Assembly: GCF_020745735.1 (NCBI RefSeq)
Contig: NC_083409.1
Location: 17,050,619-17,114,618 of the forward strand
Length of the DNA stretch: 64,000 nt
Direction: 5' to 3'
Source of the DNA: Hemiscyllium ocellatum
Taxonomy: Eukaryota
Shown here: positions 1,378-62,535 of the stretch, piece after piece
How positions within the stretch are numbered: position 1 is the stretch's first letter
How the letters are laid out: each line of letters opens with the position of its first letter
Position numbers and translations under genes: made by a program
Notes under the pieces: model-generated
What the model saw: only the letters and a program-made list of their open reading frames with translations
What the model was told of the DNA's origin: nothing
The model's database searches: none

Positions 1378-1706
1378 GCCGTGAGAACTCTCAGCCCAAG
1401 CTGACCCTGCTGCCCCCCTCCCTGGAGCAGGTCAATGCCAAGGGCACTGCCACCCTGGTGTGCCTTGCCAATCACTTCTATCCCGATGAGCTGGAGGTGC
1501 AGTGGAAGAAGGACGGTGCAGTCATTTCGGACGGGGTTCAGACCAGCAACTACCTGCGAGCTTCGGACAGCACCTACAGTGTCAGCAGCCTGCTGACCCT
1601 CTCTGGGTCTGACTGGGAGTCCGACGCTCGCTTCTCCTGTGCCCTCACCCACGTGACCCTCCCCTCTCCCCTCAGCAAGAGCATCAGGAGATCAGAATGT
1701 GTGTAG
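1378..1706 (+). CDS. IGKC: Immunoglobulin light chain constant exon, kappa-like (shark type III/NS4-like), C1-set Ig domain
   Basis: Polypyrimidine tract and AG (1376-1377), phase-1 start. Translates xRENSQPKLTLLPPSLEQVNAKGTATLVCLANHFYPDELEVQWKKDG...STYSVSSLLTLSGSDW...FSCALTHVTLPSPLSKSIRRSECV*. Both domain Cys, the core Trp and the terminal inter-chain Cys are present. The kappa class rests on recalled resemblance to nurse shark NS4 and mammalian C-kappa. Confidence 0.93.
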
Positions 1707-2614: not shown

Positions 2615-3150
2615 GTGTGTCTCTCTCAGTTGAGTGTGCGTGTTTTACATAATGCTGCCTGAGGTGTCACTGTGAATGTGGGTGTGTTATTCAGAGACAT
2701 CGACATGCAGCGCTGAGTAACATGTTCACACTCAGAGAGACACCTCCAGGCAGCATGGACTGTGAGCATTTTACTCAGTGCTCAGAGAGTGTGGTGGTGG
2801 AAAAGCATAGCAGGTCAGGCAACATCCGAGGAGCAGGAGAATCAATGCCTTCATCAGGAAAATTCCTTCATCAGGATGTCCAAAACGTTGATTTTGCTGC
2901 TGCTCAGATGCTGCCTGACCTGCTGTGCTTTTCCAGTACCACACTCTCAACTCTAAGCCCCAGCATCTGCAGTCCTCACTTTTGCCTTGTTACTCAGTGC
3001 TGCCTGGCACTCTGAGTGTGTGCGTTACTCAGTGTTGCCTGTAGATATCTCTCTGAGCGTGTGTGTTATTCTGTACTGCCTGTCAGTATCTCATTGAGTG
3101 TGAATGTGTTACTCTGTGCTGCCTGTAGGTGTCTCTGAGGTATTTGTCTC
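2615..3150 (+). repeat. Degenerate minisatellite of about 30 bp (gtgtgttactcagtgctgcctg-like units) interrupted by the palindromic element
   Basis: Repeated ttactcagtg(c/t)tgcctg and tgagtgtg units at about 2620-2780 and 2985-3150. Confidence 0.65.
2781..2982. mobile_element. Palindromic element, same family as 45312-45500, centre rearranged
   Basis: gagagtgtggtggtggaaaagcatagcaggtcaggc ... gcctgacctgctgtgcttttccagtaccacactctc. Confidence 0.8.
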
Positions 3151-3812
3151 TGAGTGATGGATAGAGAATGGGCTTTGTGATGGGAATTGAAGACTTGGCT
3201 TTAATCATCTCAAATCATGAATGAAAAACAGTTCAGTCTGAAATGGTGCCTCAGTGAGATGGCCAAAGTTTAAAAATCACACAACACCAGGTTATAGTCC
3301 AACAGGTTTCTTTGGAAGTACATGCTTTCAGAGGTCCTTCATCAGGCAGCTAGTGGGGCAGGATCATAGTTGATAGAATTTACAGTGAAATTGAGATGGC
3401 AACTGAGAAAGGTGAATACTGCGAGTGTGTTCTCAGTAAGGGAGGGATTTCAGAGGCAGTGGGCACTGTGCTCCCTAATGTGTTGCCTGATTACAAGGGG
3501 ATTTTCTGGATCCAGGGTTATTGCAGTTGTGGCTGCCTGCCCAGCCAGTGCTGACTACCCATAGTCATATTTCAATGGTCAATTAGCTCTAAACTACGTG
3601 CAGTAATATTACCTTACAGAGAGGGGAGCTGTCTGAGCGAGGGTGGTTGAATTCTTGCAGCCCCAAGGGGGGTTGCAGTGGATTAATGAAGGACACTACC
3701 AACATGAAGGTACCACCTTCTCTCCCCCTGCCTCAGCTGTGGTGACCCTTGGATTAAACTCACCACCATTTGGCTCTGTCTGTAATGAGTGAGTGGGACT
3801 ATGCTCCTCTGG

Positions 3813-3955
3813 GATTAGATTAGATTAGATTACCTACAGTGTGGAAACAGGCCTTTCGGCCCAACCAATCCACACCGACCCTCCAAACAGAAACCCACCC
3901 GACCCATTTCCCTCTGACTAATGCACCTAAAACTATGGGCAATTTAACATGGCCA
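3813..3955 (-). mobile_element. 5'-truncated HE1-like SINE / CR1 tail with (ATTAG)n end
   Basis: gattagattagattac followed by ctacagtgtggaaacaggcctttcggccc, the reverse complement of the SINE tail. Confidence 0.8.
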
Positions 3956-4412
3956 AAACATTATGTTTTCAAGAAGGGGGTAGAGACAGCTCTTGTGGCT
4001 AAAGATTCAAGGGATATGGGGTAGGGAGGGATTACAGTGTAGTGCTCGATGATCAGCCATGACCATAGATAGATTCTTGATGACTGAAGAGATGAAACAT
4101 TATCAGAGAATGTAGAGTTGAGGTTAAAATCAGATCAGCCATAAGGGCCGAGTGGCCTACTTTTGTTCCTTGCCCATATGTTGCCTCATACACTTTCACA
4201 CAATTGAAGACTGTCATTTGCATTTTCTACCTGCAGATTAAGCTGCTTGTGCAATAGGCCTCATCTGTACAGTGTTTCCTCCAGTCTTTCACCATGATAT
4301 AGTTAAGATAATGATCCCATAATCAATCCATTAACTTTGTAAGTTAGTTTAGTTAAAGCAATAAAACACATTACAATCATGAAGCAGACATTACAGCAAG
4401 CAAGATTTCACT

Positions 4413-4712
4413 GCACGGAGGCTCAGTTGTCAGCAATGCTGTCCCGCAGCGCCAGGGACCCAGGTTCGATTCCAGTCTCGGGCAACTGTCTGTTTGGAGT
4501 TTGCACATTCTCCCCGTGTCTGTGGGTTTCCTCTGGATGCTCCGGTTTCTTCCCACAGTCGAAAGATGTGCAGGTTCGCTGAATTGGCCAAACTAAATTG
4601 TCCATGGTGTTCAGGGGTGTGTGGGTCAGGGAATATGTAGAGTAATGGGGTGGGGGAGTGGGATGCACTTTGGAGGGTCAGTGTGGAGGCCTATTTCCAC
4701 ACTGTAGGGATT
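4413..4712 (+). mobile_element. HE1/V-SINE-like SINE
   Basis: Same head, core and tail as 34124-34434; more diverged. Confidence 0.85.
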
Positions 4713-5000
4713 CAGCGAATTGATCTTGGTCTGTGCAGCTTGCAGGCTCACAGATGACTATCTGGTGGGTAGAGTTCAACACCGTACATACACAGGGGTG
4801 GATTTTCTTAAAGGTAATGTGTGCACACAGCACACAGCTACTGAATATCAAGGCAAGATAGTTACATTCTCTCTTGTTGGAGACAGTCATTGCCTGGCAG
4901 CTGTGTGGCACAAATGTAACCTTATTCATGTTCCAAACCCACATCTCTATCAGTAAAATGCTTTGGAACATTCTCAGGTGACAAAAGGTGCTATACATTT

Positions 5001-5322
5001 GGGGTGGCACGATGGCTCAGTGGTTGGCACTGCTGCCTCACAGCGTCAGGGACCCGCCTCAGGCAGGTCTGTGCGGAGTTTGCACATTCTCCCTATGTCT
5101 GCGTGGGCTTCCCCCGGGTGCTCTGGTTTCCTCCCACAGTCCAAAAGATCTGCAGGCTGGTAAACTGGCCATGCTAAATTGCTAGTGTCCAGGATGAGCA
5201 GGCTAGGTGGATTAGCCATTGGAAAATACAGGGATAGCATCGGGGTCTGGATGGAATGTCCTTTGGAGGGGTGGTGTGGACTCGATAGGCTGAGTGGCCT
5301 ACTTCCACACTATAAGGATTCT
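5001..5322 (+). mobile_element. HE1/V-SINE-like SINE
   Basis: ggggtggcacgatggctcagtggtt head, conserved core and tail. Confidence 0.85.
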
Positions 5323-5426
5323 GTGATACAAATGTAAGTTCCTTCTTTCCATTCTAGCCCTGAAGCATGTGGTTCTGTCTCATTTCCACTCAAGAGATGG
5401 CAACCCTTTGAAAACAGGAGCAGCCT

Positions 5427-5547
5427 CTATTCTTTTGGAAAGTACTTCTTCCACTCTGTGTCCTTCATAGCCTTGTAGACAACAACAATGAGATCGGGAA
5501 ATAACCCAAAGCTATAATCTTCTGGACTCTTCATTAAACTGTGGAAC
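5427..5547 (-). pseudogene. RNASEL: RNase L-like gene, terminal coding exon (end of KEN/RNase domain)
   Basis: ttgtacttttcAG acceptor, phase 2. Translates [39 protein letters not shown], which aligns to recalled human RNase L [38 protein letters not shown]. Phase matches the donor of the exon at 9629-9753. Confidence 0.85.
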
Positions 5548-5867
5548 CTGAAAAGTACAATTAATGTCCAAGTCAATGAAGATATTTCTCAGCAATCCCT
5601 AAATGCTGAGTTTTAGTACTCAGCAGGCCCCAGGAATCAAAATAACCGAGTAGATCATTGCTCTGAATTGCTCATAAATGTCACCTTCACATTTCAGGAG
5701 GCTTTGATCAAAAAGGTTGCTTACTCCTCTCCAAAATACAGCTTAAAATCAGCTCCAACTCCCAACCATCCAGCTGAGAGCGGAGCCCTGTACAAACTGG
5801 AACCTGGTCAGTGGGAGCACTGTCACCTCTGTCTCAGAAGCTTTGTCTATTTAAACCAGTGTCTTAG

Positions 5868-6685
5868 TCAGAGAGTCATTCAGCACGGAAACAGACCCTT
5901 CGGTTCAACTCATCCGTGCCAACCAGACATCCTCATCTAGTTCCATTTGCCATGATTTAGCCCATATCCTTCTAAACCCTTCCTATTCATGGACCCATAT
6001 AAATGACGTAATTGTACCAGCTTCCACCACTTCCACTGGCAGCTCATTCCGTGCATGCACCATCCTCTGCATGAAAAGTTGCCCCTTAGTTCCCTTACAA
6101 ATTCTTCCTCTATTACCTTAAACCTATGCCCTCTAGTTTTGGACTGATATACCCTGGGAAAAAGACCTTGGATATTCACCTTATCGATGCCCCTCACGAT
6201 TTTATAAACCTCCATAAGTTCACCCCTCAACCTCCAACGCTCCAGGAAAGTAGCCCCAATCGATTCAGCCTCTCCCTGTAGCTCAAACCCTCCAGTCCCG
6301 ACAACATCCTTGCAAATCTTTTTTTTGCCCCCTTTCAAGTTTAAAAACATTGTTCCTAGAGCAGGAAGACCAGAACTGAGCCCTGTATTCTCAAGGTGTC
6401 CTCACCAATGGCCACTTTGGTGGACAGCCAGAACATGACATCCCAACTCCTATACTCAATGCACAGACCAATCAAGGCGAGTGTACCAATCACCTTTGTC
6501 ACTACCCTGTTTACCCATGGCTTCACTTTCAAGGAACTGTGAGTCTGCACTCCAAGGTCTCTTTGCTCAGCAACACTCTCCAGGAATCTGCCCTGATTTG
6601 CCTTCCCAAAAAGCAATGCCTTACACTTATCTAAATTAAACTCCATCTCCCACCCCTTGCCCATTGGCCCATCTGAACACGAATT
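5868..6685 (-). mobile_element. CR1-like LINE 3' fragment
   Basis: MEFNLDKC, QRDLGV, RLRGELMEVYKIVRG motifs. Confidence 0.9.
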
Positions 6686-6689
6686 GATC

Positions 6690-7392
6690 ATACATTACAA
6701 ACTGGAACATATGGAAGGCATTGGTGAGACACAACTGCAGTATTGTGTCCAATTGTGGTCTGCTTATTAGATTAGATTACTTACAGTATGGAAACAGGCC
6801 CCTCGACCCAACAAGTCCACAGTGACCCTCCCAAGAGCAACCCACCCAAACCCAATTCCTTACACCTAACACCATTTGAGGAAGGATGTGGTGGGACCGG
6901 AGGCTGTTCAGAGGATTTTCCCCAAACTGATTCCAGGAATGAAAGGGTTGTCCTATGAAGAGCAGTTAAATAGATTGGGCTTGTACTCACTGGAGTTCAA
7001 AAGAACGAGGAAGGATCTGATTGAGGGATAGAAAATGTGAAAGGGGATTGATAGGGTGGATATTGAATAGATGCTCCCCCTTGCGGGACAGTCTGGAACA
7101 AGAGGTCATCGATATCGAGTGAGAGGAAGTAGGTTCAAAACTGAGATGAGGTGAAACTATTTCTCCCAGAGGGTTGTGAATCTGTGAAACTCAATGCCCC
7201 AGAGTGCAGTGGAGGCAGAATCAATCAACAGGCTCAAGAAAGATATGTTTCTGATTAAACGTGAGATAAAGAACAAAGGCAACAGGCAGGAGAGTGGAGT
7301 TGAGACCAGGATAAGATCAGCCACAGTCATGTTAAATGGCGGAGCGGGCTCAAAGGGCTGAATTGCCTCCTCCCGCTCCTAATTCCTATGTT
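6690..7392 (+). mobile_element. CR1-like LINE 3' fragment of a second subfamily
   Basis: LVRPQLQYCVQ-like coding remnant and cctcctcccgctcctaattcctatg tail. Confidence 0.8.
6766..6872 (-). mobile_element. 5'-truncated HE1-like SINE tail nested in a CR1 fragment
   Basis: (ATTAG)n and ggaaacaggccc...caacaagtccac interrupt the CR1 sequence. Confidence 0.75.
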
Positions 7393-7759
7393 GAGCACAC
7401 AGTCAAGGCTGACACTGCAAAACTGAGGGAGCTGTTGTCTTTCAGGTGAGATACAAAACAGAAGTCCTGCCACAATCTATCGAACTGTACTATCTCCCCC
7501 AGTGACAAATGCTGGAATTTGAATTCAAATCACAAAGCAAGCCTCATTAATGGTGACCACGATAGTGATCCCTGAATGCTGTCCAGCCTCAGCCTTACCC
7601 AGTCTGGACTTCATGTGACTCTAGCCCCACAGCAATCTGGTTAACTCTTAGGTGCCTTCTGAGAGGCCACAGCAAGGCCAGCAGTTCAAGGGCAATTAGT
7701 CTTGGGTTACAAATGCTGATCGATGCCAGTGACACCCACGTCCCAGAAAATAGAATGCA

Positions 7760-8850
7760 ACAGAGATTGGTGTCAGCCAAAATTGTCAGATCAGACTCCC
7801 AATGAGATGGGGAGATGGTTAAAGATGTATTCAGCTCAGTATGGAACAGGTCCCCACTTGTTAGCACATCGTCACTGATAAAATAAGTGAGAGAAAACAG
7901 AAAACTAAAGGTGAGAACACTCAAATGTGGGAATATCAGTGAGATTTCAGGCAACTGAAGGAAGATATGAAGAACTGCAAAGGAAGACAAAAAGGAAGCA
8001 AGAGTTACAAAGCAAGTGATGGAGAAAGAGACCTGCAAGAGGTCACAAGAATAACACAAATGCTTTACACGAAAATTAGAAAATCATGGGAGCTCCATTG
8101 CAATGTGACCCCATTAAAAACAAACTGGGAATTCCATGAATGAGACTAAGGGAATGACCGATGTGAACAATAATTAGTTGTGTCAGTCTTCACGGTCAAG
8201 GAACAGGATAATGCAGCTTCCATTCCAGGGAGGTTAACAATGAAAGGAAGATTGGAATTCACAAAACTTGATACATGCCAGAAAACAGCATTGGAGAGTG
8301 AGCAGCTCTAAAGGCTGACAGATCTCCAGGACCTCAGGGGTTTAAAGGAAGAGGGGGAAGAAGTTTCAGAGGCTTTTCCCATCAGATTCCGAAGCAGCAA
8401 CGATTCCTTTAGTTTGGAAAATGTCTTGCTGTAACTCCACGGGTTGAAGAAAGATGAGTGAGGGAACCAAGGAAATTATATCCTGGTCAATCTAACATCT
8501 CTTTTAGGGGCTTCATTGGAATCTATAATTAACAGCCGAGAGAATGAGCATGTAGAGAATTGGAAATAGCCCACATAGATTTGTGATGGGTAGGTTTTAA
8601 CTAACAAACCAAATGCATTAAATAAAATAGTTGATAGGATGTATAGGCTTATCAACTTTCAGAAGTACTCGATCATTTACCATAAAACAGTCTGCTGACC
8701 AATATTAAAACCCTTAGGATTGAAGATGAATGTTTGACTTGGTTCAGAGGCTGGTTTAGTGACAGACAACAGAGAAAGAAAGTGACGAGTGGTGTTCCAC
8801 AAGGATTCTGTGGTGAGGCCTTAACTACTTACTGTATGTATTAATGAGAA
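7760..8850 (+). mobile_element. Old degraded CR1 ORF2 fragment
   Basis: Remnants of the endonuclease-RT linker and SGVPQG motif (gagtggtgttccacaaggat at about 8790). Confidence 0.55.
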
Positions 8851-8974
8851 TCATAGTTCCACATTGACACAAAGACTGATGGAATAGTAAGCAGTGCAGA
8901 TGATGTTTTTGTTTAAAACTCACTTGGAGGACATGGGTGTTGCTGTTTGGGCCAGTTTCCTAGTTGCCCTTGAG

Positions 8975-9312
8975 AATCATAGAATCATAGAATCATTATA
9001 TGGTGTGGAAGCAGGCCATTCAGCCCATCAAGTTCACACCAACCCACCAAACAGCAACCCGTCTAGATCAGCCCCATCCTTGTAATGCTGCATTTCCCAT
9101 GGCTAACCCACCCTGCCTGCACATCCCTGGACACTGTGTGCAATTTAGCATGGCTAATCCACCAAAACTACACATCTATGTAGTGTGTGGAGGAAACTCA
9201 CTCAGACCTGGGGAAAATGTGCAAACTCCAGACAGACAGTCATCCCAGGGTGGAATTGAACCCAGGTCCCTGGCGCTGCGAGGGAGCAGCACTAATCACT
9301 GACCCACAATGC
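8975..9312 (-). mobile_element. HE1/V-SINE-like SINE
   Basis: Reverse complement of head (gcagcactaatcactgaccc), core and (ATAGAATC)n tail. Confidence 0.8.
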
Positions 9313-9628
9313 TGCCCTTTGCAAGGTGGTGGTGAGCTGCCTTCTTGAACCGCTGCAGTCCATGTGCTGTAGATAAACCCACAATGCCCTAAGGGAGGGT
9401 AGTCCAGGATTTTGACCCAGCGACACTGAAGGAACGGTAGTATATTTTCATATCAGGATGCTATGTAGATTTGAGTGAAACTTGAAGGTGGTGGTATGCT
9501 GTGTATCTGCTGCACTTGTCCTTCTAATGGAAATGGCCTTGGGTTTGGAAGGTGCTCATTCTGCCTTTGAATCAATGCAAAAAGCTGAAAAAGCAGGAAA
9601 ATATTGCCACCAACGATTGTTCACATAC

Positions 9629-9753
9629 TCTTTCTATTCATCGAAGTGCTGGATGAGGTTTCTTATGAATTTCAGAAGGTCATTGATAGTGTCCTTATAT
9701 TCTTTATTCTTACCTTGTCTCTTGTTCATGTCATTGAGGAGAACGGAGTCAAC
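9629..9753 (-). pseudogene. RNASEL: RNase L-like gene, penultimate exon (catalytic part of KEN domain), disabled
   Basis: Translates [40 protein letters not shown] versus human INECVMKKMNKF...[24 protein letters not shown]. Phase-2 donor GA|gtatgt. In-frame TAG at 9634-9636; acceptor reads ttctCG instead of AG. Confidence 0.88.
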
Positions 9754-10699
9754 CGAGAAGGAAATGAACAGCAGAGTTTGTTTTCTCTGATGATTAAATT
9801 CACCTTGCTTGCTCCTCTGAACACCTGAAGAAGGGGCGAGGCTTGTGTCTTATAATAAACCTGTTGGACTATAACCTGGTGTCGTATGATTTTTGACCTT
9901 GGGGATTCCTGGATACAAGGTGTTCAGTAAAGATAGGAAAGAGAGAAAATTGCGGGAAGTGGTGGAATGTACTGGAGCATGAGAGTGCTGACCAACCTTA
10001 GGCCCTGAGATATGATGGAGATGAAGGGTGAACTCTACTGGGCTTTAACTCACTGTTACCAGAGTAAAACAGGGATTGCCCATTTCACAAGAGAGTACAT
10101 GGAGCTAACAAACCAGGTGCGTGTGAAACACCCACCCTGTCCCTGAGAGAGTGTGGGACAAGAACAGGGACATTCTCAGACAGAAAGGATGCTAAAAATG
10201 GTATCACCCCGAGAGTGAAGGGTGGGGATAGTGACAGCGGCACTCCCCCAGAGAGTGGGGAAAGTAACACTGACACATTTAAAACTGTATTATCACAAGT
10301 GAGAATTCAAACAGCCACCCAATCCATCATACGGTGTTGAAGATGCACTGTCCTCATCAAAACATGTTTGCAAACTCTTCACAACACATAAGGGGAGAGA
10401 AACATTGAAAACTGTATTATCACGAGTAAGGGTCCATTTAAAACTTGGATCATGATGTTAAATGTTCTCAGCCGCAAACAACACTGGTGTTTTGACGTCA
10501 TTATCTTACTAAACAATATTAAAACCTTGGCCAAACATTTTCCTGCAGACAGTGTATTTAAAATATCAAGAGGCTTTCCCCATTGTTGGTTTGATCAGTG
10601 ACGTAGCAAGGAAGCAGCAGCTGCCCCATGAACTCCAACAAAAGAATGAGAACAGGCTCTTCATACGGAGCTGGCTCCCAAGAATCCAATTCAACAGCA

Positions 10700-13514: not shown

Positions 13515-14140
13515 TCAAAGTGTTTGGCATGCTTTCTTTCATTGGTCAGAGTATTGAGTACAGTAGTTGGGAGGTCACGTAGCAGTTGTACAGGTCATTG
13601 GTTAGGCCACTGTTGGAATATTGTGTGCAATTCTCGTCTCTTCCTATTGGAAAGATGTTGTGAAACTTGAAAGGGTTCAGGAAAGATTTTCAAGAATGTT
13701 GCCAAGGTTGGAGGATTTGAGCTACAGGGAGAGGCTGGACAGGCAGGGGCTGTTTTCCCTGGTGCTGAGGGGTGACCTTATAGAGGTTTACAAAATTATG
13801 AGGGGTATGGATAGGATAAATAGGCAAAGTCTTTTCCCTGGGGTCGTGGAATCCAGAACGAGTGGGCATAAGTTTAGGGTGAGAGGGGAAAGATATAAAA
13901 GAGACCTAAGGGACAAATCTTTCACACAGAGGGTGGTATGTGTATGGAATGAGCTGCCAGAGGAAGTAGTGGAGGCTGGTACAATTGCAACATTTAAGAG
14001 GCATTTGGATGGGTATATAAATAGGAAGGGTTTGGAGGGATATGGGCCGGGTGCTGGCAGGTGGGATTGATTGGGTTTTGGGATATCTGGTTGGACTGAA
14101 CTGTCTGTTTCCGTGCTGTACATCTCTATGACTCTATGAA
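13515..14140 (+). mobile_element. CR1-like LINE 3' end sharing its tail with the SINE
   Basis: KDVVKLERVQERFSRMLP...RGDLIEVYKIMRG; ends tacatctctatgactctatga. Confidence 0.92.
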
Positions 14141-25089: not shown

Positions 25090-26110
25090 TGACCATTCCC
25101 AGTAGGAGGCCTGTGACCAGTGGTGTGCCACAAGGATCGGTGCTGGGTTCACTGCTTTTCGTCATTTACATAAATGATTTGGATGTGAACATGGAACATA
25201 GTATGGTTAGTAAGTTTGCAGATAACACCAAAATTGAAGGTGCAGTGGACAGTGAAGAAGGTTCAGAATACAACAGGATCTTGTTCAGATGGGCTGAGGA
25301 GTGGCAGATGAAGTTTAGTTTACATAAATGTGAGGTGCTGCATTTTGGAAAGGCAAATAAGGGCAGGACTTATACACTCAATGGTAAAGTCCTGGGGAGT
25401 GTTGCTGAGCAAAGAGACCTTGGAGTGCAGGTTCATAGTTCCTTGAAAGTGGAGTCACAAGTAAACAGGACAGTGAAGGTGGTGTTTGATATGTTTGCCT
25501 TTATTGGTCAGAGCATTGAGTACAGGAGTTGGGAGGTCATGTTGCAGCTGAATAAGACACTGATCAGGCCTCTTTTAGAATATTCTGTGCAATTCTGGAC
25601 TCCCTGCTCTTGGAAGGATGTTGTGAATCTTGAAAGGGTTATGCAAAGATTTACAAGGGTGTTGCCTGGGTGGGGGGGTTCTGGTATAGGAAGAGAATGA
25701 ATTGGTTGGGGTTACATTCCCTGGAGCACCAGAGGCTGAGAGGCGGCTGTGAAAAGATTTATAAAATTATGAGTGGTATGGACAGGGTAAATAGACAAGT
25801 CTTTTCCCTGGTGAAGGCAATTCCAAAAATAGAGGGCAGAGGTGAGAGGGAAACATTTAAAAGGTACGTAACAGGTAACTGTTTCATGCAGGGGGTGGTG
25901 TGTACATGGAATGAGTTGCCAGAGGAAGTGGAGGCAGCTGGCATAATGGCGATATTTAAAAGGCATCTGGTGGTGTATATGAATAGGAAGGGTTTAAGAG
26001 GAAATGGACCAAATGCTGGCAAATGGGACTCGATTTTATCTCGGATAACTGGTCTGTATGGACAAGTTGAACCGAAGGGTCTGTTTCTGAGCTGTCCATC
26101 TCTACGACTC
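25090..26110 (+). mobile_element. CR1-like LINE RT C-terminus and 3' end
   Basis: VTSGVPQGSVLGSLLFVIYINDLD, SKFADNTKI, KCEVLHFG motifs in ORF 25089-25700. Confidence 0.95.
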
Positions 26111-40879: not shown

Positions 40880-42830
40880 ATGAACATAGAACAAAGAGCA
40901 TTACAGCACACTACAGGCACTTTGGCCATCAATGTTGCACTGACCTGTAGAACCAATTTGAAGCCCATCTATCCTCCACTATTCCATTTTCATCCATATG
41001 TTTATCCAATGAGCATGTAAATGCCCTTAAAGTTGATGAGTCCACTACTGTTGCAGGCAGTGTGTTCCACACCACTACCACTCTGACTAAAGAAATTACC
41101 TCTGACATCTGTACATCCTCCTGCAATTTAAAGCTATGTCCCCTTGTGCTAGCCATCACCATTTGGGAAAAAAGGCTCTCTCTGTCCACCCTATCTAACC
41201 CTCTGATTATCTTATATGTCACAATTAAATCACCTCTCAATCTTCTTCTCTCTAATGAAAACAGCCGTAAGTCCCTCAGCCTTTCCTCATAAGACCTTCC
41301 CTCCATACCAGGTAACATCCTTGTAAATCTCCTCTGAACCCTTTCTAAAGCTTCCACATCCTTTCTATAATGCAGTGACTAGAACTGTACACAGTACTCC
41401 AAGTATGGCCACACCAGAGTTTTGTACAGCTGCAACATGTCCTTGTGGCTCTGAAACTCAATCCCTCTACCAATAAAAGCTAATACACCGTATGCCTTCG
41501 GAACAACCCTATCAAGCTGGGTGGCAACTTTCAAGGACCTATACATGGACACCGAGACCTCTCTGCTCATCTACACTACCAAGAATCTTACCATTAGCCC
41601 AGTATTCCTTATTCCTGTTGCTCCTTCCTAACCTCAGACTTTTCTGCATTAAACTCCATTTGCCACTTCTCAGCCCAGCTCTGCAGCTTATCTATATCCT
41701 TCTGTAACCTGCAACACCCTTCAGCACTATACACAACTCCACTGACCTTCTGTCATCTGCAAATTTACTCACCCATCATTCTATGCCCTCATCTGAGTCA
41801 AAAATGACAAACAGCAGTGCACCCAAAATAGATCCTTGCGTTACATCACTCGTTATTGAACTCCAGGATGAACATTTCTCATTAGCTACTACACTCTGTC
41901 TTCTTTCAGCGAGCCAATTTCTGATCCAAACAGTTAAATCACCCTCACTCCCATGCCTCTGTATTTTGTGCAATAGCCTACAGTGGGAAATTTATCAAAT
42001 GCCTTACTGAAATCCATATACACCACATCAACTGCTTTACCCTCATCCATCTGTTTGGTCACTTTCTCAAAAGAACTCAATAGGGTTTGTGAGACACGAC
42101 CTACCCTTCACAAAAATGTGTTGACTATCCCTAATCAACATATTCCCTTCTTGATGATTATAAATCCTACCTCTTATAACCTTTTCCAACATCTTACCCA
42201 GAACCGAATGAGGCTCACTCGTCTATAATACCAGGGTTGTTTTTACTCCCCTTCTCAAACAAGGGGACAACATTTGTTATCCTCCAGTCTTCTAGCACTG
42301 TTCCTGTAGACAACGACGACATATAGATCAAAGGTCAAGGTTCTGCAATCTCCTCCCTGGCTTCTCAGAAAATCCTCGGATTAATCCCATCTGGCCCAGG
42401 GGACTTATCTATTTTCACACTTTCTCGAATTGCTAACACCTCCTCGTCAACCTCAATCCCATCTAGTCTAATAGCCTGCATCGCAGTATTCTCCTTGACA
42501 ACACTGTCTTTTTCCAGTGTAAAAATGAACAAAAAATATTCTTTAAGTGCTTCCCCATCTCCACGGACTCCATGCCCAACATCCCACAACTATCCTTGAT
42601 TGGCCCTAATCTTTCTCATCATTCTTTTCTTCCTGATATACTTATAGAAAACTTGATGGTTTTCCTTGATCCTATCTGCCAGTGATTTCTCATGTCCCTT
42701 CTTAGCTCTCTCTTTTGGTCTTTCCTGGCTAACCCGTAACTCTCAAGCACTCTGACTGAGCTTTACATCTCATCCTAACATAAGTTTTCTTCATTCTCTT
42801 GACAAGAGATTCAACTTCTTTAGTAAGCCA
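40880..42830 (-). mobile_element. Longest CR1-like LINE remnant in the window (ORF2 RT to 3' end)
   Basis: KSPGPDGINPRI, VTQGSILGALLFVIF, ALERVQRRFTRMLPG motifs and (GAACATA)n tail. Confidence 0.92.
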
Positions 42831-44316
42831 CAGTTCCCTACACATGGTATAATGATGCTCAAATTTACAGACAAACTTGGATAAATCTGCCCAAGTAGAT
42901 CTCACAGTGTCACCACTGCTGAATTAGCAACTAAACCAGAAAGAGAATGATCAGGGTTTAAGATTTTGTTTAGCAGCAAAGTCTTCTTAATATTTTATAA
43001 CTGCAATGCCCCTCCATGCTTGTCATACTCAATTTGAAGAAATTTTATTTCAACAAGACAGTGTTTATGCTCACAAAATTAAAAAGGATATTTTGAAAGA
43101 AAATCTGGAAATAAAAGGTTGGTGTCAGTAAAAATGTCCACAAAGATGTTGAGCAGCCGGAAAAACCCAAATAATTCACGGACGGACTTTGAAGGAAATC
43201 TTTTGCCCACAACTAATATGGCATACGTGACTACAGTATTACGGCAGCATGGATGCATGCATACCATACTGACCAAGCATTGACCATCTCTTGCAATCGT
43301 TTTGATATGAAGTGGTATTATCATGACTGCTTCCCTCACAATTATCACATTAGAGTTACCCTCGACCTGAAACTGAAGTGGATCAGCTATACAATACTGG
43401 GTCAACAAAACCAGGTCAGAAGCTGAAAATTCTTCACTAAGTAACTTACTTTCTGTCTCCCCAGTACATGCCCAAGATGCATAACACCAAATAGGATGTA
43501 GCAACCTGCTACAGTGAGAGCTTTGTGCACTATATGATGCACTGCAGAAACTCACTCAATTCCTTCAATAGCATCTTCAAAGCCTGTGACCTCTACCATC
43601 TAAAAGGACACAGACAGTAGATAACATGGTAACACCATTACTTGTAAGCTCCTCTGCAAGCCACACACCGTCCTGACTTAGGAATACATCATTCCTTCAC
43701 TGCTATAGGATCAAAATCCCAGGTACTCCTTTCCTGTCAGCATTGTGGTTGTACCTGTAGCAGGTGAACTGCAGATGTTTGAGGAAATGACTCACTATCA
43801 CCTTCCCAAGTGCAATGAAGGATGGACAACAATACTGGCCTTACCAGCAGCGAAGAAGTCTATTGAAATTATTTGTTTAAAATCCTGACCCGTGGGTGAG
43901 GACAACAGTCTTGCAACAATCTATTCCAGAGCCTTGAACTCCAAACCTAACAGCACTTGCGAGTTGATACGTTTATATTGACTAAGCAGACTGCAGTGGC
44001 TCAAGGCAGCTCAACACCATGACCATTTCGAGAATGAGGGATAGTAAATAAATACCAGCATTACCGCAACATCCCAAGTTCAAAGAACAAACTTAAAAAT
44101 TTGAAAAAAAAATCAAAATTGGCTTCATTCTACTCAATCCAAACAGTGATAAGGGGAAAGATGACGTGAATACCTAGCTTCTGCACAACAGCCTCACTGC
44201 AATGAGAAAAGACACTAGCTTCTCCGGAAAGGATTACTGGAAGGATCTGCACATTCTTACATTGCATTTTTGAAAGGCTATTCAGCTTACCATCACTGCA
44301 TAGGTCAGTCACTCAC

Positions 44317-44504
44317 TTTTTCTGGTGCTCCAACCAGGCCAGCTCTGCTTTGGTCTTTTCCTTCATGGCTTGTTCTCTCAGTTTGAGGAGTGACACCTGG
44401 TGCTGTGCACGCATCTCCTCCTCCTCCACGTATTGTCGCACCATCTCCATGGTGAATTTACAGAGACTGTCTTGACCTCCAGAGAAGGACATGCTGAAAT
44501 CATG
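44317..44504 (-). CDS. CEP350: CEP350-like exon (FSGGQDSLCKFTMEMVRQY...KEKTKAELAWLEHQKK)
   Basis: Near-identical to human FSGGQDSFSKFTMEMVRQYMKEEEMRA...KEKTKAELAWLEHQKK; AA|gtgagt donor. Confidence 0.95.
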
Positions 44505-45311
44505 CTGACAGTGAAAGACAGGAGGACAAACAGTACAGAGTGAGGTGATCTGCTTCCCCTGACCCAAGCAAAACTTGTCCTGTAATCCACAAAACCTCAG
44601 GACTGAGTGCAGACAACAACAACAATCAAAAGTAGTTGGAGCATCATCAGATATGCCAAACATGCTGCATCACAAGTGATCCCATCAAACTATCCCAATA
44701 TTTATCAGGATGAGTAAATGCTGACTGTCTCATTTCATCATCTGTGAAACACATTAAGACTGGCAAAGTCCCTCATACTGATAATTTTCTGGTCAGGACT
44801 CCAGTTACTAATTTGCTGCCAGGTTCTGATAAATAACCAAAAACAGAATAGGAGTTGCACATACAGAGAATAAGGGTGTCATGGTTACATCAACATTAGC
44901 CAGGAGGTGGCTATTTAGCTTCTTGAGCCTATTCCACCATTCACCCAAATCATGGTAATCTTCAACATCATGACAAATCCCTGTCTTTGTCCCATAATCC
45001 TTCAGCATTTTGGTTAAAAATCTACCAATCTCAGATTTAAAATTTGTAACTGATTTCAAATCAATCACTGTTTGTGGAAGGGAGTTTCAAACTTCATCCA
45101 TTTCTGTGTGTAAAAGTGTTCCACAATATCACACCTCAATGTTCTGACTCTAACATGTTATCTATTTAATCTCTCTTCTTAAATTAAGCCTCAGAGCCCA
45201 AGTATCACTTCAGTAAGTCTACATTGCACTTCCACTAAGAGTGATACTCTTCTTAAGCCATGGTGCCCAGCCCTGACGGATTGGTCTGACTCGGTTTTGA
45301 ATTGCTGAAGA

Positions 45312-45500: not shown

Positions 45501-46417
45501 GAATTGCTGAAGCATGACTTCTAATCCTTTGCTTTTGCAACTTCTTTGGATATAAATGTCAACATTCCACTGATCCTTGTTCACTGTTTTGAGCCTGTTT
45601 GTGACATTTTCATGAACTACATACAGCTGGATCACCCCCATCAAGTTTCTTTGAACTCCACTGTCTCTCGATTTTCACAATCAAGAAATATCCTATCTTG
45701 ATCCAACCTCTCACTTGCTGACACAAACTCATCTGTAGATTTTTCATTTACTTCATCTATCAAGATTGTTTTCTTATTTTATGCTTTCATCTACCTACAC
45801 TCGAGATCGCTGCTAATCTGGAGAGAGGCCCCAAGTTTTGAATGTGGCTTTCCTTTCATCATGAATAGCGAATAGTTAGGGCACCGACATAGATCCATGC
45901 AAGATATCACTAACCATATCCTTCCAATTAGAATATCTCTTATTATCTGCACAAATGTCTCTTGTTCAAATCAAATTCCTCTGCAAGCGCCACTTGTCTT
46001 TTGCATCTTATTACCACCTTTAATGGACAGTAGAAAGTTGTAAATTCAGGGATATTCTTAGCAGTCAAATTTAGCTTGTGTTTACCAGACGAGGTGAGCA
46101 AGGAATCCCAGTAAATATTAATCTTTGTCTTCACTGCATGGTAACTCGATCACAAAGATTAACAATGTAAAAGATTAATTCCTCTTCAATATTTATAAAC
46201 TCTGGGCACATTGTTAGTGAGTGGTAATTATCATTTGTAAAAAACAGCCCCTGCCCAACACTTCCCTTATACTCATTGACCCATCTGCTCCTCATCCTCT
46301 ACATCTGAGTCTCATAGCAAGATACCTAGAACATGGAGAGGAGCAACTATGCCAAGCACTGAGATCCCACAAACTGGCACCATCACTCACCCTTGGCTAA
46401 CCCATGGGAGAACTCAC

Positions 46418-46602
46418 TTTGACAGCTATTGAAGCCGATTGATCCTGCAGAATGTCCTCATCGGAATCATCCTGCTGCCTGTGTTTCTTCCCCATGTTAA
46501 AGCAGCAATGGCTCTTTGATGGCAGAAGGGGATAAAAGGATTGCTCTTCAATTTCATCCTCAGTCATTGACTCATCGAACTCAGTGGCAACAGAAGCAGA
46601 GT
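46418..46602 (-). CDS. CEP350: CEP350-like exon (DSASVATEFDESMTEDEIEEQSF...DDSDEDILQDQSASIAVK)
   Basis: Matches DSTSIATEYSLKFDESMTEDEIEEQSFRSLLPSESHRRFNME; YSLK is missing and RR is changed to CC. Confidence 0.93.
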
Positions 46603-47061
46603 CTGGAGAGACAATAAATGATTTACATTGTTCTTTGTTATTTTCCATTGTTCACTGAAAGATTTAGAACTTGAACATGAAGTTAAAGGCTGAGCTAGAA
46701 TCCTTGGATTAGTTTTCTGCCCAAGGAGCAGAGTTGGGTTACAATTATTGATTCAACACAACTGTTATGTTGAATCACACATTGTTTAAGGGGACATGTG
46801 GAAGTTTCCATCTGCACAACCACAGATCCAAGGGGAACACAAGGAAGTTGGATTGAATAGCTTGAGCACATGACTGAATAAAGGAATCTTGAAATAAATT
46901 AGTGCTCAACTTGTTACTATTTGACCCACATATCCTTTGGGTATGGAAGGAGTGCTTACATGACAGTTGATTTGAATCATCTAATTGAAGAGACACAAAT
47001 CCCCATTTAAGTCATGAGATCAGTGAAAGGACAAAACACCATTTCTGGTTAAAGAATTCGC

Positions 47062-53680: not shown

Positions 53681-54572
53681 CCATTTCATGCTTTCTTTTC
53701 TCCAAAGGGGAGCATGAGACAATGTGTTAAAAGATCTCAGACGTTGTGAAAAGGAGTGAAAATGGGGTGTTTATGTATTGATTCCGATGGCATTTATCAA
53801 TCAATCACAGCTATGCAGTCATGAATACGAAGGCAATTCCCTCCATGAATAAAGGAAACCTACTACAGAGCTCATCCAACGGGAATTCTTACCTTCAGTA
53901 AACTCTTCCATCACATGACCCAAAATTGCACCCTCAGCTGTTTACTTATTTGTTCACTTCCAGACATGACTATTCCAATGTTCTCTTGACTGAACTTTCA
54001 TCAACTTCAACATATTCAAAAGCTCCACTTACTGCACCCTCTTTCCAAGCCCCTTTTACCCACGATCCTTGTACTTGCTGATTCATGACTTGCCAACAGC
54101 TTCAGTATAAGAAGTCCTGTCCTTCCGGACATATTTTTCCTTTCTATCTCTGCAATTTCCTTCAATCCTCGAAACTTTTGAAGTGTCTATGTTCCCCATT
54201 TTAGCATTTTCATTTTCACCACCCCAGCTCAGCACTGAAGCTTTCAGCTGCATGGTCATCAGCTATGCAACTCTGTCCTAACGCAGCTCAAATAGTAACA
54301 TTTTCTTCCTTTCCAACATTCTATCTCACCTATTTCTTTGACCAAGCATTTGGTCATCTTTCTTAATATCATATGGTATGCTGTTAAGCTTTGCCCTGCT
54401 CTTCCTTGACAGTTTACTACATTCGAGGAATGAAATAATTTCAAACTGCAGTGACAATTAACTCAATGCAGCAATTGTATGAGAGAAATTCCTTCAAAAC
54501 TCCAGAAAGTACTGGCTCTTCAGCATGACTGGGGGAAAGGGCCATCTTGCCAAGTACACTAGAAGAAAGTAC

Positions 54573-54704
54573 CTCTGTAACCTGACGTGCTGTATCAGCC
54601 ATCAGCCTTGCAAGTTCCACCTGCTGAGTGATCATTTTAGTTGTGGACTCTTGCAGCATCTCTTGGCGAACCTGTACAAACTGCTGCAGACTTTCTGCAC
54701 ATGC
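54573..54704 (-). CDS. CEP350: CEP350-like exon (ACAESLQQFVQ...ARLMADTARQVTE)
   Basis: 132 nt, phase 0 to 0; matches VHAESLQQVVQ...ARLTTDAARQICE, three codons shorter. Confidence 0.88.
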
Positions 54705-55329
54705 CTGAGAACACAAAGAGAGGTTTTCACGTCCAGCAATTGATAATTCAGATACTTTAATCAAGAGACAAAGCACTATTAAAATGCAATGTGAAATTGA
54801 CTTATGATCCAGTAAGCACACTGCTCACATGTTTCATCATGCAACTTTAGCTCACTGACACGGCTTCTGTTTTACAATCAAGCTTTTAAGCCTTTCCCTC
54901 TCCTCCAACGTCACATATAAGCACAGTAACCTAGTCATAGTGTGATTTTGTTTTTTTGATTTCCAGTATTTGCAGTTCTTTGGTTTTTTTTTAATTTAAC
55001 CTGGTCATGGTATTGCGAGATTGTTTCCATGATGGGGAGATGTATTCAACCTTAAAACTAAAAACCAGACCATTCAGAACTGAAAAATCAGGAATTAATT
55101 ATTTAATTCATTCTCAGGATGTAGATATCCCTGACACTGACTGTCCAACCATAACTGGCATTAAAAGGTGAAAGTTAGTGATCTTCTTAAACCACGGCAA
55201 CCCATGTGGCTGCAAGATACTCCCAATGTATGTCAGACCATTGTAGGCAGCAAAGGAAGAGCAACATAATTTAATGTCATAACTATATGCGGCATTCCCA
55301 GGCACTGGAATGGAGGCCTTGCTTTATGA

Positions 55330-58089: not shown

Positions 58090-58630
58090 CTGGACACAAA
58101 CAAAGATTAAATAGGAACCATCACTCTACATTCCACTGCTCTGCTCTGTGAAAAACTGGTATTTAAATTTGCAGTGTCCAGAGAGAGAGAGAGTAACAAT
58201 TGAAATGCAAAGGCATCAAAATCTTAAGAGTAACAAATGACAAGATTTTAATCAATTAATTTTAATATTGCAACTTTATAAATAAAAAAAATTTTCTCAT
58301 AAATCTCATCATAATGGCTCAAATTTTAGAAAGCTGAAATTTCTTGAAAACTTGGCAAGTTTGCCCTGCTTCTATCAGTCAACTTGGAAAGTGCAGTCAT
58401 GCGCAGGTTCGATGCTAATATCTGCACATTTAAGATTAGGCATTGTCCTAAATCACAACCCAAGGGTAAGTAAATTTAATCTCTAGTTTTGGAATAATCT
58501 TTGTTTTGCCTGATTTAACTGAAGAACGTTGCTCAGAATGTTGCCTGGTTTGGAAAACGAGCGCAGCCATTATCACTTAAGACAATTTCACAAAACCATT
58601 TCTGAAAGAGCACAAGGCATAGACCTGTAC

Positions 58631-58794
58631 CTTTAGGATCTGAGCCAATGACACAGTCTCTTGTTGAGCAAAGGCTATTCCCCGGGTCATGTCTATCTCC
58701 GATAGCTGACGGATGGACTCTTCCATAGCATCCAAGTAAGTGTGTTGAGCAGTCATGTGGTGTTGGATACTTGGTGGGGAGCTGAGCATCGAGG
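58631..58794 (-). CDS. CEP350: CEP350-like exon (TYLDAMEESIRQLSEIDMTRGIAFAQQETVSLAQILK)
   Basis: Matches SYLNAIEESVRQLSDVERVRGISLAQQESVSLAQIIK; AG/GT sites, phase 1 to 0. Confidence 0.92.
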
Positions 58795-59059
58795 CTGCAA
58801 TAACCAAAGTGAAAAGTGTAATTCCAACTTTTACAATTAGTTCAATAATGCATTGGGATCATAGGGTTAACTGCACGCCTCTCCAGGATTCAAAACAAGT
58901 TCGGGAACTGCGTAAAAAAATGACAAGGGACAAGACATTGAAATTTTCATGAGATTCACAGGATAAAACAAATAGCAAAGCGTGCGGAAAATCCAAACCC
59001 AATCATTGTATTTGGGTCCTGGTGAATGATCAGGAATGCAACAAAGGTTCACCAGACTT

Positions 59060-60842: not shown

Positions 60843-61836
60843 TCCAGTGTAGGCTTACTAAAATATACTGAGTATCTGGATTATTTACGTGGCACTAATA
60901 CCACTCGGCCATCGCCTCCCCTTGAAATGAAACTGTAACTTTATTAATTTGGTGACTTCCATAACTTCACTTTGTATTTTCCATCTACTTACTGTCTCTT
61001 CCACCAGTAGAAGCAGTTCTTCCAACATCCTGACCAGGTTTGAGGTCTCCTCTGAACCACTATTCAATCAAAATGATCAGCAATTTATCGAATCTCTCTT
61101 GATTACTATAATCAGCGAATGTCAAGTTAACACTTTCTGGTTCCTGTGCACAGCCTTGAAGTCCTTCCTGAATTAGGGTTCCCAATACTGGGGACAACAT
61201 TCTAACTGTAGCTTAACCAGTGATTTGTGATGGTTTAACATCATTCATTTTTGTACTCCAGTCCCAATTTATAAAAGCTTAATGGCTCTGATGAACTGAT
61301 GATGATCTAAATACTGCACAAGACTGAGCTTCACTAACGTATCTCCATTAATAGTTGGTTTCACAGAGCAGTGAGCATTGAATAAAAAACAAATAGAATC
61401 AACTAAGGTGGGCTACACGGCAAAGGATTCTTGTAACCACGTTTTATTATTATTATTCCATATTTGAAATTGTGCCCATGTTTCAGGTTACTGGCAGACC
61501 CCAGTTTACAAATGGTTTCTGTTCTAGAGTGCATCTGCAAGTCAATTGGTGCACAAGTTGTAACACACTGTAAAAAGTCATAAGCACAGAAAATGTTTGT
61601 GTGCAAGATCTTTAAAATTACACCCTCGGATGAGATTACGTGTGAAAGAACAAGCATTCTGAAGCCTGGGATCCTCTATGTATCTATCCTGCCACTGTTG
61701 ACTCTGTTGTGATTTGAGTGTCAGAAGAGTGCAACTATAAGCTGTCAAGCAGGTATTGGTTGTTTCTAATATATGCACAGCTTCAGGAATTGATAACAGA
61801 AAGTGACCGACAGAAGGTACATACGTCTGGTCATAC

Positions 61837-62008
61837 CTATATGCAGTTAATGGATCTCTGAATTCATCTCGACTGCTCTTCATAATGTTACTTTCCAGGG
61901 TGGTAGATCGCAAGGGACTGCGGGAGGTGTTGACCTTCCGTGATTTGCTGCGACTACTGGATTTGACAGATGTAGCACTGGCTACAGAATCCTCCAGATA
62001 CCTTCCAT
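61837..62008 (-). CDS. CEP350: CEP350-like exon (DGRYLEDS...RSPLRSTTLESNIMK...EFRDPLTAYR)
   Basis: ctatcAG acceptor, AG|gtatga donor, phase 1 to 2; matches DGRYLDDSW...RSPLRATTLESNVKK...EFREPLVSYR. Confidence 0.92.
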
Positions 62009-62535
62009 CTGATAGAAACAGAAACAAAGTTTAAGAAGTCAAAAAGGAGCATGCATTCCATTATCACAATCAATGGGATTGGTTAGTAAGCACAAGTTTC
62101 TCTTAAACTGTTGCTGTCAGAATATAGAAGAGATAGATGCTAAGTTAATTCTTCTCGCCCACCTCCTCAAATTCTGTGGACCAGCACAAAGTGATAAACC
62201 AGACATTTGGGGGGAATCTGCAAAGGGCAACAGGTGTTGACACAGATGGAAGCGGGAGATGACCACTTCAGGAAGGGAATGGAGGGTTGACTTTGCCTGC
62301 TAAGCCTTACCAATGAAGCTCCATAAATTAGAGAGAAGGAAAAGATTCCATAGCCTCAGTCTCTGTTGCAAATGCTTTCAAAACACTGCAAAATGTCAGT
62401 GCATGACCCTCGACCACTTAACTTAATTTCACCAGGGTTATTACTTTTATCTGATTAACAATGGCCAGCATGAGGTCAAGAGTAACTGTTGATCTAATTA
62501 CCATGAACAATTCATTTTGTATTCCTTCCACTTAC

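What the first reader, a model, noticed from the sequence alone, without database searches (positions are those of the whole stretch)
5427..9753. Hidden RNase L (2-5A-dependent ribonuclease) gene remnant convergent with an Ig light-chain gene
Seen: two minus-strand exons absent from the ORF track join in phase (GA|G). Together they give [80 protein letters not shown]. Knowledge: this matches the RNase L KEN domain, and residues equivalent to human Y655, R667, N668 and H672 are all present. The FIRNLxxH signature favours RNase L over IRE1 (RNKKHH), and the intron phases fit the last two human exons as I recall them. RNase L is well characterised in tetrapods and poorly so in fishes. Inference: sharks have or had an RNase L, and this copy is a disabled duplicate.
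Basis: partly seen in the sequence, partly recalled or inferred. Interest (0 to 1): 0.8.

Follow-up and report, generated by a model that had tools for sequence, protein, structure and literature searches.

The report
Dead RNase L tail beside antibody gene
The two hidden exons are real leftovers of the antiviral RNase L gene, but only the last two exons were copied next to a shark antibody light-chain gene and the copy is broken, so this is ordinary duplication debris and not a working or newly discovered gene.

Summary
Minus-strand exons at 9753-9629 and 5547-5427 join in phase (GA|G). Each alone hits Pfam Ribonuc_2-5A and solved RNase L structures; neither hits IRE1.

They are 75-76/81 identical to the intact RNase L of bamboo and epaulette sharks (Hemiscylliidae) and nest in that clade (bootstrap 95).

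This is only a 3' fragment. tblastn with 11 full-length RNase L proteins, and a profile of 16 of them searched against every ORF of the 64 kb window, find nothing for the ankyrin repeats, the pseudokinase or the first third of the KEN domain.

DNA homology to the intact Chiloscyllium punctatum gene starts about 150-210 bp upstream of the penultimate exon. It runs about 2 kb past the stop codon, towards an intact Ig light-chain C exon (1378-1706, + strand) lying tail-to-tail.

The copy has two further lesions: its 3' splice site is TCG instead of TAG, and an AAG codon is now TAG. The exons are no better conserved than the flanking introns.

RNase L in cartilaginous fishes has been published since 2007 and was functionally tested in 2023, and NCBI annotates it in at least 10 sharks and rays.

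Earlier notes of this scan describe the same RNase L-tail/Ig-C arrangement in several other windows of this genome.

Verdict: a non-processed, truncated pseudogene fragment; low interest.

The parts
9629..9753 (-). Relic of the penultimate coding exon of RNase L (125 nt; KEN-domain helix carrying the Y...[12 protein letters not shown] catalytic motif). It has an in-frame TAG at 9634-9636 where intact genes have AAG (Lys).
   Evidence: It is 118/125 nt identical to C. punctatum exon L001:37398-37522.
9754..9755 (-). Destroyed 3' splice site: CG here, where the intact gene has AG (TTCTAG|GTT becomes TTCTCG|GTT).
   Evidence: alignment A1 column 167.
9756..9964 (-). Remnant of the intron upstream of the penultimate exon. 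Homology to the intact gene ends at about 9901-9964, which is the breakpoint of the copied segment.
   Evidence: Window 9555-9901 matches L001 37597-37241 (89%) and 9902-9964 matches L001 36780-36718 (92%). Nothing unique matches beyond.
5548..9628 (-). Retained intron (4,081 nt) between the two relic exons. GT donor and AG acceptor are intact, and it is filled with LINE and SINE-like fragments.
5427..5547 (-). Relic of the last coding exon of RNase L (39 codons plus the natural TAG stop at 5427-5429).
   Evidence: It is 116/121 nt identical to the C. punctatum last exon.
3457..5426 (-). 3' flank co-copied with the exons. It is homologous to the DNA downstream of the intact C. punctatum RNase L gene, up to the end of that scaffold.
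   Evidence: Window 3951-6161 matches L001 44473-42275 (83-95%) and 3457-3956 matches L001 50766-50266 (89%).
1378..1706 (+). Ig light-chain constant-region exon, open (108 codons plus TAG), with a splice acceptor. It is convergent (tail-to-tail) with the RNase L relic.
   Evidence: C1-set E=7.8e-22; best solved-structure hit is a light chain.

Best explanation
This is a non-processed (DNA-level) duplicated fragment of the shark RNase L gene. It holds only the last two coding exons, their intron and about 2 kb of 3' flank, and it sits tail-to-tail with an Ig light-chain constant exon.

It does nothing as a ribonuclease, for these reasons:
- It has no promoter and no start codon.
- It has no ankyrin 2-5A sensor and no pseudokinase dimerisation domain.
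- It lacks the first third of the KEN domain.
- Its first exon has lost its splice acceptor (AG to CG) and carries a nonsense codon (AAG to TAG).

Most likely origin (inferred, not shown here): the working RNase L gene lies next to an Ig light-chain cluster. When that cluster was amplified by segmental duplication, the copied unit reached into the 3' end of RNase L. The fragment has since decayed neutrally.

Shown here: identity, truncation, lesions, retained intron, homology of the flanks, adjacency to Ig C, and the lack of extra constraint on the exons.

Inferred: that the Ig cluster and the RNase L tail were copied together as one unit.
For: Identity:
- Pfam Ribonuc_2-5A hits on both pieces.
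- RNase L is the best hit among solved structures, and IRE1 does not appear.
- 75-76/81 residues match hemiscylliid RNase L.
- The relic nests in that clade with bootstrap 95 and has a branch about 4 times longer than the working orthologues.

Truncation:
- tblastn with 11 full-length RNase L proteins finds only the last two exons.
- A profile HMM of 16 RNase L proteins, run without filters on all 2,856 ORFs, hits only profile positions 725-768 and 773-811 of 811.
- The window has no N.
- In the intact gene the next exon upstream is only 1.7 kb away, whereas here 54 kb upstream hold none.

Not a retrocopy: the intron is retained, and intron and 3'-flank DNA are homologous to the intact C. punctatum locus L001.

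Lesions: acceptor TAG to TCG, and AAG to TAG.

Neutral decay:
- The exons differ from the parent at 12/246 nt (4.9%); the adjacent introns and flank differ at 23/389 (5.9%).
- Five of the six amino-acid differences, counting the stop, are specific to the relic.

Adjacency: an Ig C exon lies 3.7 kb away, convergent.

Leads only: earlier notes of this scan report the same RNase L-tail/Ig-C arrangement in other windows of this genome.
Against: - Co-duplication with the Ig cluster is not demonstrated here. The only parental DNA I could read (L001) ends 53 bp after the last homologous block, about 1.75 kb short of where an Ig C exon would be. No neighbouring genes are called within 10 kb of the intact gene in four chromosome-level assemblies.
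- A crude count gives 6 synonymous against 5 missense differences (pN/pS 0.18), which could suggest past constraint. However, 10 of the 12 changes are transitions, which brings the excess within chance. Part of the divergence also lies on the working gene's own lineage.
- Identity around the last exon (about 95%) is higher than further downstream (83-90%). The cause was not determined.
Confidence: 0.93

Rival explanations
1. It is the 3' end of the working RNase L gene, and the upstream exons are missing only because of misassembly or because they lie outside the window.
For: The catalytic motif, donor site, last-exon acceptor and natural stop are all intact.
Against: There is no N in the window. 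The 54 kb upstream hold no other RNase L exon even with an unfiltered profile search, whereas the intact gene spans 20-33 kb with the next exon 1.7 kb away. The acceptor is mutated and there is a nonsense codon. The relic differs from all three hemiscylliid orthologues at 5 positions where those orthologues are identical to each other.
Confidence: 0.02
2. The fragment has been co-opted. Either it holds a cis-regulatory element serving the adjacent Ig light-chain cluster (3' enhancer, terminator or insulator), or it forms terminal exons of a chimeric transcript from the CEP350-like gene copy upstream on the same strand.
For: It lies 3.7 kb downstream of an open Ig C exon. A roughly 600 bp stretch around the last exon is about 95% identical to the parent, against 83-90% for the DNA further downstream. 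CEP350-like exons lie upstream on the same strand.
Against: The exons are no more conserved than their immediate flanks. The acceptor needed for splicing into exon A is destroyed. No PU.1/IRF composite site (GGAANNGAAA) occurs anywhere in the window, against 4.2 expected by chance. There are no expression data.
Confidence: 0.04
3. It is a processed (retrotransposed) pseudogene, or it derives from IRE1/ERN rather than RNase L.
For: The KEN domain is shared by IRE1 and RNase L (Pfam PF06479).
Against: A 4.1 kb intron is retained at the parental position, with homologous intron DNA. Identity to shark RNase L is 93%. No IRE1 hit appears among solved structures up to E=10. The relic nests within shark RNase L in the tree.
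Confidence: 0.01

Closest known systems
RNase L (2-5A-dependent ribonuclease) of hemiscylliid sharks: XP_043555869.1 (Chiloscyllium plagiosum), XP_072429490.1 / GCC19658.1 (C. punctatum), XP_060686052.1 (Hemiscyllium ocellatum)
   Same: The last 81 residues are 75-76/81 identical. The exon borders, intron phases, natural stop codon and flanking intron and 3' DNA are the same.
   Different: The intact genes encode 812-873 aa with ankyrin repeats, pseudokinase and a complete KEN domain. The window holds only the last 81 codons, with a nonsense codon and a dead splice acceptor.
Human and pig RNase L (PDB 4oau, 4o1o)
   Same: The C-terminal KEN helices are shared, including Y...[12 protein letters not shown] and FPDL..YVY....E..K.FP.
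   Different: The two pieces score only about 20 bits each against the mammalian chains. This is the mammalian orthologue of the parent gene, not of this fragment.
IRE1/ERN1 KEN domain
   Same: Same Pfam family (PF06479).
   Different: No detectable hit of either piece to any solved IRE1 chain up to E=10. The motif is the RNase L type, FIRNLxxH.
Non-processed (duplicated) pseudogene fragments at the edges of segmental duplications, here in the multi-cluster Ig light-chain loci of sharks
   Same: It is a partial gene copy with introns retained, a breakpoint inside an intron, and neutral decay, next to an amplified gene family.
   Different: Nothing unusual, apart from the neighbour being an antibody gene cluster.

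Membership tests
RNase L (functional 2-5A-dependent ribonuclease) | N-terminal ankyrin-repeat domain that binds 2-5A | tested here: not met
   No ankyrin match anywhere in the 64 kb, by tblastn with 11 RNase L proteins, by profile HMM without filters or by motif scan.
RNase L (functional 2-5A-dependent ribonuclease) | Pseudokinase (Pkinase) domain that mediates dimerisation | tested here: not met
   No match to RNase L residues 1-724 of the 811-position profile. Best tblastn E>0.05.
RNase L (functional 2-5A-dependent ribonuclease) | Complete KEN / Ribonuc_2-5A domain (PF06479) | tested here: not met
   Only profile positions 43-78 and 96-125 of 127 are present. The first third, encoded by upstream exons in the intact gene, is absent.
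RNase L (functional 2-5A-dependent ribonuclease) | Catalytic motif Y...R-N-x-x-x-H of the KEN domain | tested here: met
   [19 protein letters not shown] aligns with the same motif in all shark, caecilian, turtle, pig and human RNase L sequences.
RNase L (functional 2-5A-dependent ribonuclease) | Uninterrupted reading frame with usable splice sites | tested here: not met
   TAG at 9634-9636 replaces AAG, and the acceptor AG is CG at 9754-9755.
RNase L lineage (homology or descent, as opposed to IRE1) | Groups with RNase L sequences rather than other KEN proteins | tested here: met
   It nests in the hemiscylliid RNase L clade (bootstrap 95) with non-RNase L KEN repeats as outgroup. There is no IRE1 hit among solved structures. 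No IRE1 sequence was available for inclusion in the tree.
Non-processed duplicated pseudogene | Introns and flanking non-coding DNA of the parent retained; disabling lesions; no extra constraint on the coding part | tested here: met

The most novel reading that the evidence does not exclude
The RNase L tail is not mere hitch-hiking debris. One possibility is that the segment is kept in the Ig light-chain duplication unit because it carries a cis element the cluster needs (3' enhancer, terminator or insulator). Another is that the many relic copies act as gene-conversion partners that feed variation into, or take it from, the C-terminal KEN region of the working RNase L gene, which evolves under arms-race selection.
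Probability: 0.04. Interest if true: 0.5.

Novelty: new member of a known kind. Interest (0 to 1): 0.12.

Why it matters
It matters little. The fragment confirms that this shark lineage has RNase L, which is already published and annotated. It also marks one edge of a segmental duplication in the light-chain locus.

Its practical uses are two:
- As an annotation warning: KEN-domain hits in shark Ig loci are dead fragments, not extra RNase L genes.
- As a neutral marker for reconstructing how the Ig light-chain clusters were amplified.

Tried and rejected
- Search for upstream exons. A regex for ankyrin and kinase motifs, tblastn with 11 RNase L proteins and an unfiltered profile HMM on all ORFs found nothing.
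- A frameshifted upstream extension of exon A. I first suspected 'SFPSR...' in another frame was homologous to 'SFHKW'. I rejected this once the alignment with the intact gene showed that this stretch is the polypyrimidine tract of the intron and that the exon starts at GTT.
- Neighbours of the intact gene. The gene tables for Mustelus, C. plagiosum, Hemiscyllium and C. punctatum chromosomes came without DNA and list nothing within 10 kb. This is inconclusive, because Ig segments are usually not listed as protein genes.
- Ig C exon as a route to other cassettes. The homologue search with the Ig C exon returned only three short hits without useful context.
- Exact look-up of the relic ORF in public assemblies found nothing on record.
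- Rfam scan of the whole window at gathering thresholds gave no hit.
- PU.1/IRF composite motif: 0 sites.
- dN/dS: the raw ratio of 0.18 is not trustworthy with 11 changes and a strong transition bias, so I did not take it as evidence of selection.
- Literature search for CEP350 or RNASEL beside shark light-chain loci found nothing relevant.
Full report
**1. The observation**

On the minus strand the sequence reads GTT GAC TCC ... CAC TTC GAT GAA TAG AAA GA|gtatgt (exon A, 9753->9629). After ...ttttcag| it reads G TTC CAC AGT ... CCA AAA GAA TAG (exon B, 5547->5427).

- Pfam: exon A hits Ribonuc_2-5A (PF06479) at profile positions 43-78/127, with E=1.2e-5 and 25.9 bits, above the curated cut-off of 23.3. 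Exon B hits positions 96-125, E=0.021.
- Solved structures: the top hits of each piece are pig RNase L (4o1o, residues 640-668 and 675-711) and human RNase L (4oau). No IRE1 chain appears up to E=10.

The two hits are independent, collinear and on the same strand, so the match is not chance.

**2. What it derives from**

An exhaustive search of 1.84 billion representative proteins with exon A returned an 811-aa protein. NCBI names it 2-5A-dependent ribonuclease-like, Mustelus asterias. It has ankyrin repeats, a Pkinase domain and a Ribonuc_2-5A domain.

A homologue search with its KEN region found intact RNase L in these species, with further cluster members:
- Scyliorhinus canicula and S. torazame
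- Heterodontus francisci
- Carcharodon carcharias
- Chiloscyllium punctatum
- Narcine bancroftii
- Hemitrygon akajei
- Mobula birostris
- a caecilian and a turtle

The relic is closest to Hemiscylliidae:
- 76/81 residues identical to C. plagiosum
- 75/81 to C. punctatum and Hemiscyllium ocellatum
- 63/81 to Heterodontus
- 44-49/81 to carcharhiniform and lamniform sharks

In a maximum-likelihood tree of this segment, rooted with non-RNase L KEN repeats from a teleost protein, the relic nests inside the hemiscylliid clade (ultrafast bootstrap 95). Its branch is 0.05, against 0-0.012 for the working orthologues.

**3. It is only a fragment**

- tblastn of 11 full-length RNase L proteins against the window finds only the two exons (E about 2e-18 each with C. 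punctatum). Nothing credible matches residues 1-764.
- A profile HMM of 16 full-length RNase L proteins, run without filters against all 2,856 stop-to-stop ORFs of at least 15 aa on both strands, hits only profile positions 725-768 and 773-811 of 811. It reports nothing else even at E<=10.
- The window has no N.

**4. Comparison with the intact gene**

The C. punctatum scaffold BEZZ01001581.1 (locus L001) carries the intact gene. Its coding exons lie at L001 10001-10042, 22195-23886, 28821-28997, 30823-31044, 35579-35713, 37398-37525 and 42896-43013.

Unique homology with the window:

| Window | L001 | Identity |
|---|---|---|
| 9902-9964 | 36780-36718 | 92% |
| 9555-9901 | 37597-37241 | 89% |
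| 3951-6161 | 44473-42275 | 83% overall, about 95% around the last exon |
| 3457-3956 | 50766-50266 | 89% |

Everything else shared between the two sequences is multi-copy LINE or SINE material.

- The copied segment therefore begins inside the intron about 150-210 bp upstream of the penultimate exon.
- It keeps the intron between the two exons.
- It continues at least 2 kb past the stop codon.
- L001 ends 53 bp after the last block, so I could not see what lies beyond in the parental locus.
- The retained intron and homologous non-coding DNA exclude a retrocopy.

**5. Lesions**

1. Everything 5' of the penultimate exon is lost: promoter, ATG, ankyrin repeats, pseudokinase and the first third of the KEN domain.
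2. The acceptor of exon A is TTCTCG|GTT instead of TTCTAG|GTT (position 9755).
3. AAG (Lys) has become TAG (9636-9634).
4. Four missense changes are specific to the relic (T>I, S>N, A>V, V>M) at positions where the three hemiscylliid orthologues are identical to each other.

The donor of exon A, the acceptor of exon B, the natural stop and the Y...RN...H motif are unchanged.

**6. Constraint**

- The exons differ from the C. punctatum gene at 12/246 nt (4.9%). The immediately flanking intron and 3' DNA differ at 23/389 (5.9%). The coding part is therefore no better preserved than its surroundings.
- A crude count gives 6 synonymous, 5 missense and 1 nonsense change (pN/pS 0.18).
- Ten of the twelve changes are transitions. 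About a third of random transitions are synonymous, so the excess is within chance. Some changes also lie on the working gene's own lineage.
- I read this as neutral decay.

**7. Surroundings**

- An open Ig light-chain C exon lies at 1378-1706 on the + strand. It has an acceptor, 108 codons and a TAG; it hits C1-set at E=7.8e-22, and its best structural hit is a light chain. It is convergent with the relic, and the two stops are 3.7 kb apart.
- Upstream on the minus strand, at about 31-62 kb, are exons of a CEP350-like gene copy. The ORF at 44316-44663 hits 'centrosome-associated protein 350-like isoform X2 [C. plagiosum]' at E=1e-22.
- Earlier notes of this scan report the same RNase L-tail/Ig-C cassette in several other windows of this genome, many partial CEP350 copies, and a fuller RNase L-type gene between CEP350 and the Ig cluster 1.8 Mb away.
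- I could not read those windows.

**8. Known or new**

- RNase L and OAS were reported in a cartilaginous fish in 2007 (PMC1845163).
- A 2023 study showed that RNase L is present in all major jawed-vertebrate lineages except ray-finned fishes, and that Callorhinchus OAS plus RNase L is functional in yeast (PMC10400998).
- The inference 'sharks have an RNase L' is therefore already established.
- This locus is a new but ordinary member of a known kind: a truncated, non-processed pseudogene at the edge of a segmental duplication.

**9. Mechanism and verdict**

- The fragment has no function as a nuclease.
- Most likely an Ig light-chain cluster lying tail-to-tail with RNase L was duplicated, with a breakpoint in the intron before the penultimate RNase L exon. 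The copy has since drifted.
- Confidence is 0.93 for 'dead duplicated 3' fragment' and about 0.7 for the specific co-duplication history.
- Interest is low.

Noticed in passing
window 1378-1706 (+): An open Ig light-chain constant exon (108 codons, ends ...SECV*). Its V and J segments must lie before the window start.
   Followed up: partly
window ~31000-62100 (-), e.g. 44316-44663, 46400-46651, 54444-54824, 58580-58858, 61581-62030: Exons of a CEP350-like gene copy lie on the same strand as the RNase L relic. One ORF matches NCBI 'centrosome-associated protein 350-like isoform X2' of C. plagiosum (132 aa) at E=1e-22, along with many short Logan contigs. Earlier notes describe 'mini-CEP350' copies across this genome.
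   Followed up: partly
protein P0001 (TMS01848.1, Larimichthys crocea, 449 aa): A teleost predicted protein holds three tandem KEN (Ribonuc_2-5A) domains with an RNase L-like LLRFIRNLxEH motif, but no kinase or ankyrin part. Ray-finned fishes are reported to lack RNase L, so this may belong to another KEN clade or be an annotation artefact.
   Followed up: no
proteins P0020, P0021: Ig C1-set proteins 84% and 78% identical to this light-chain C exon are deposited as Aeromonas veronii and Salmonella enterica proteins, on contigs of 507 and 990 bp. They look like contaminating vertebrate Ig sequence, though no source organism was identified.
   Followed up: no
proteins P0004 and P0024 (Scyliorhinus torazame): Two separate series of NCBI accessions, both 808 aa and more than 90% identical, suggest that the cloudy catshark may have two intact RNase L genes.
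   Followed up: no
window 2785-2982: A 61-nt inverted repeat (2785-2845 / 2888-2948, 87% complementary). In addition, a 76-bp stretch (2907-2982) is 88% identical to DNA just after exon 1 of the intact C. punctatum RNase L gene (L001 10116-10191). This is probably a small mobile element rather than a piece of the gene.
   Followed up: no
window 5866-6700, 13520-14140, 25100-26110, 40930-41380: Repeated LINE reverse-transcriptase C-terminal fragments (motif ...YRERL..LGLFSLE.RRLRGDLIEVYKIMRG...). One of them sits inside the relic's intron.
   Followed up: no
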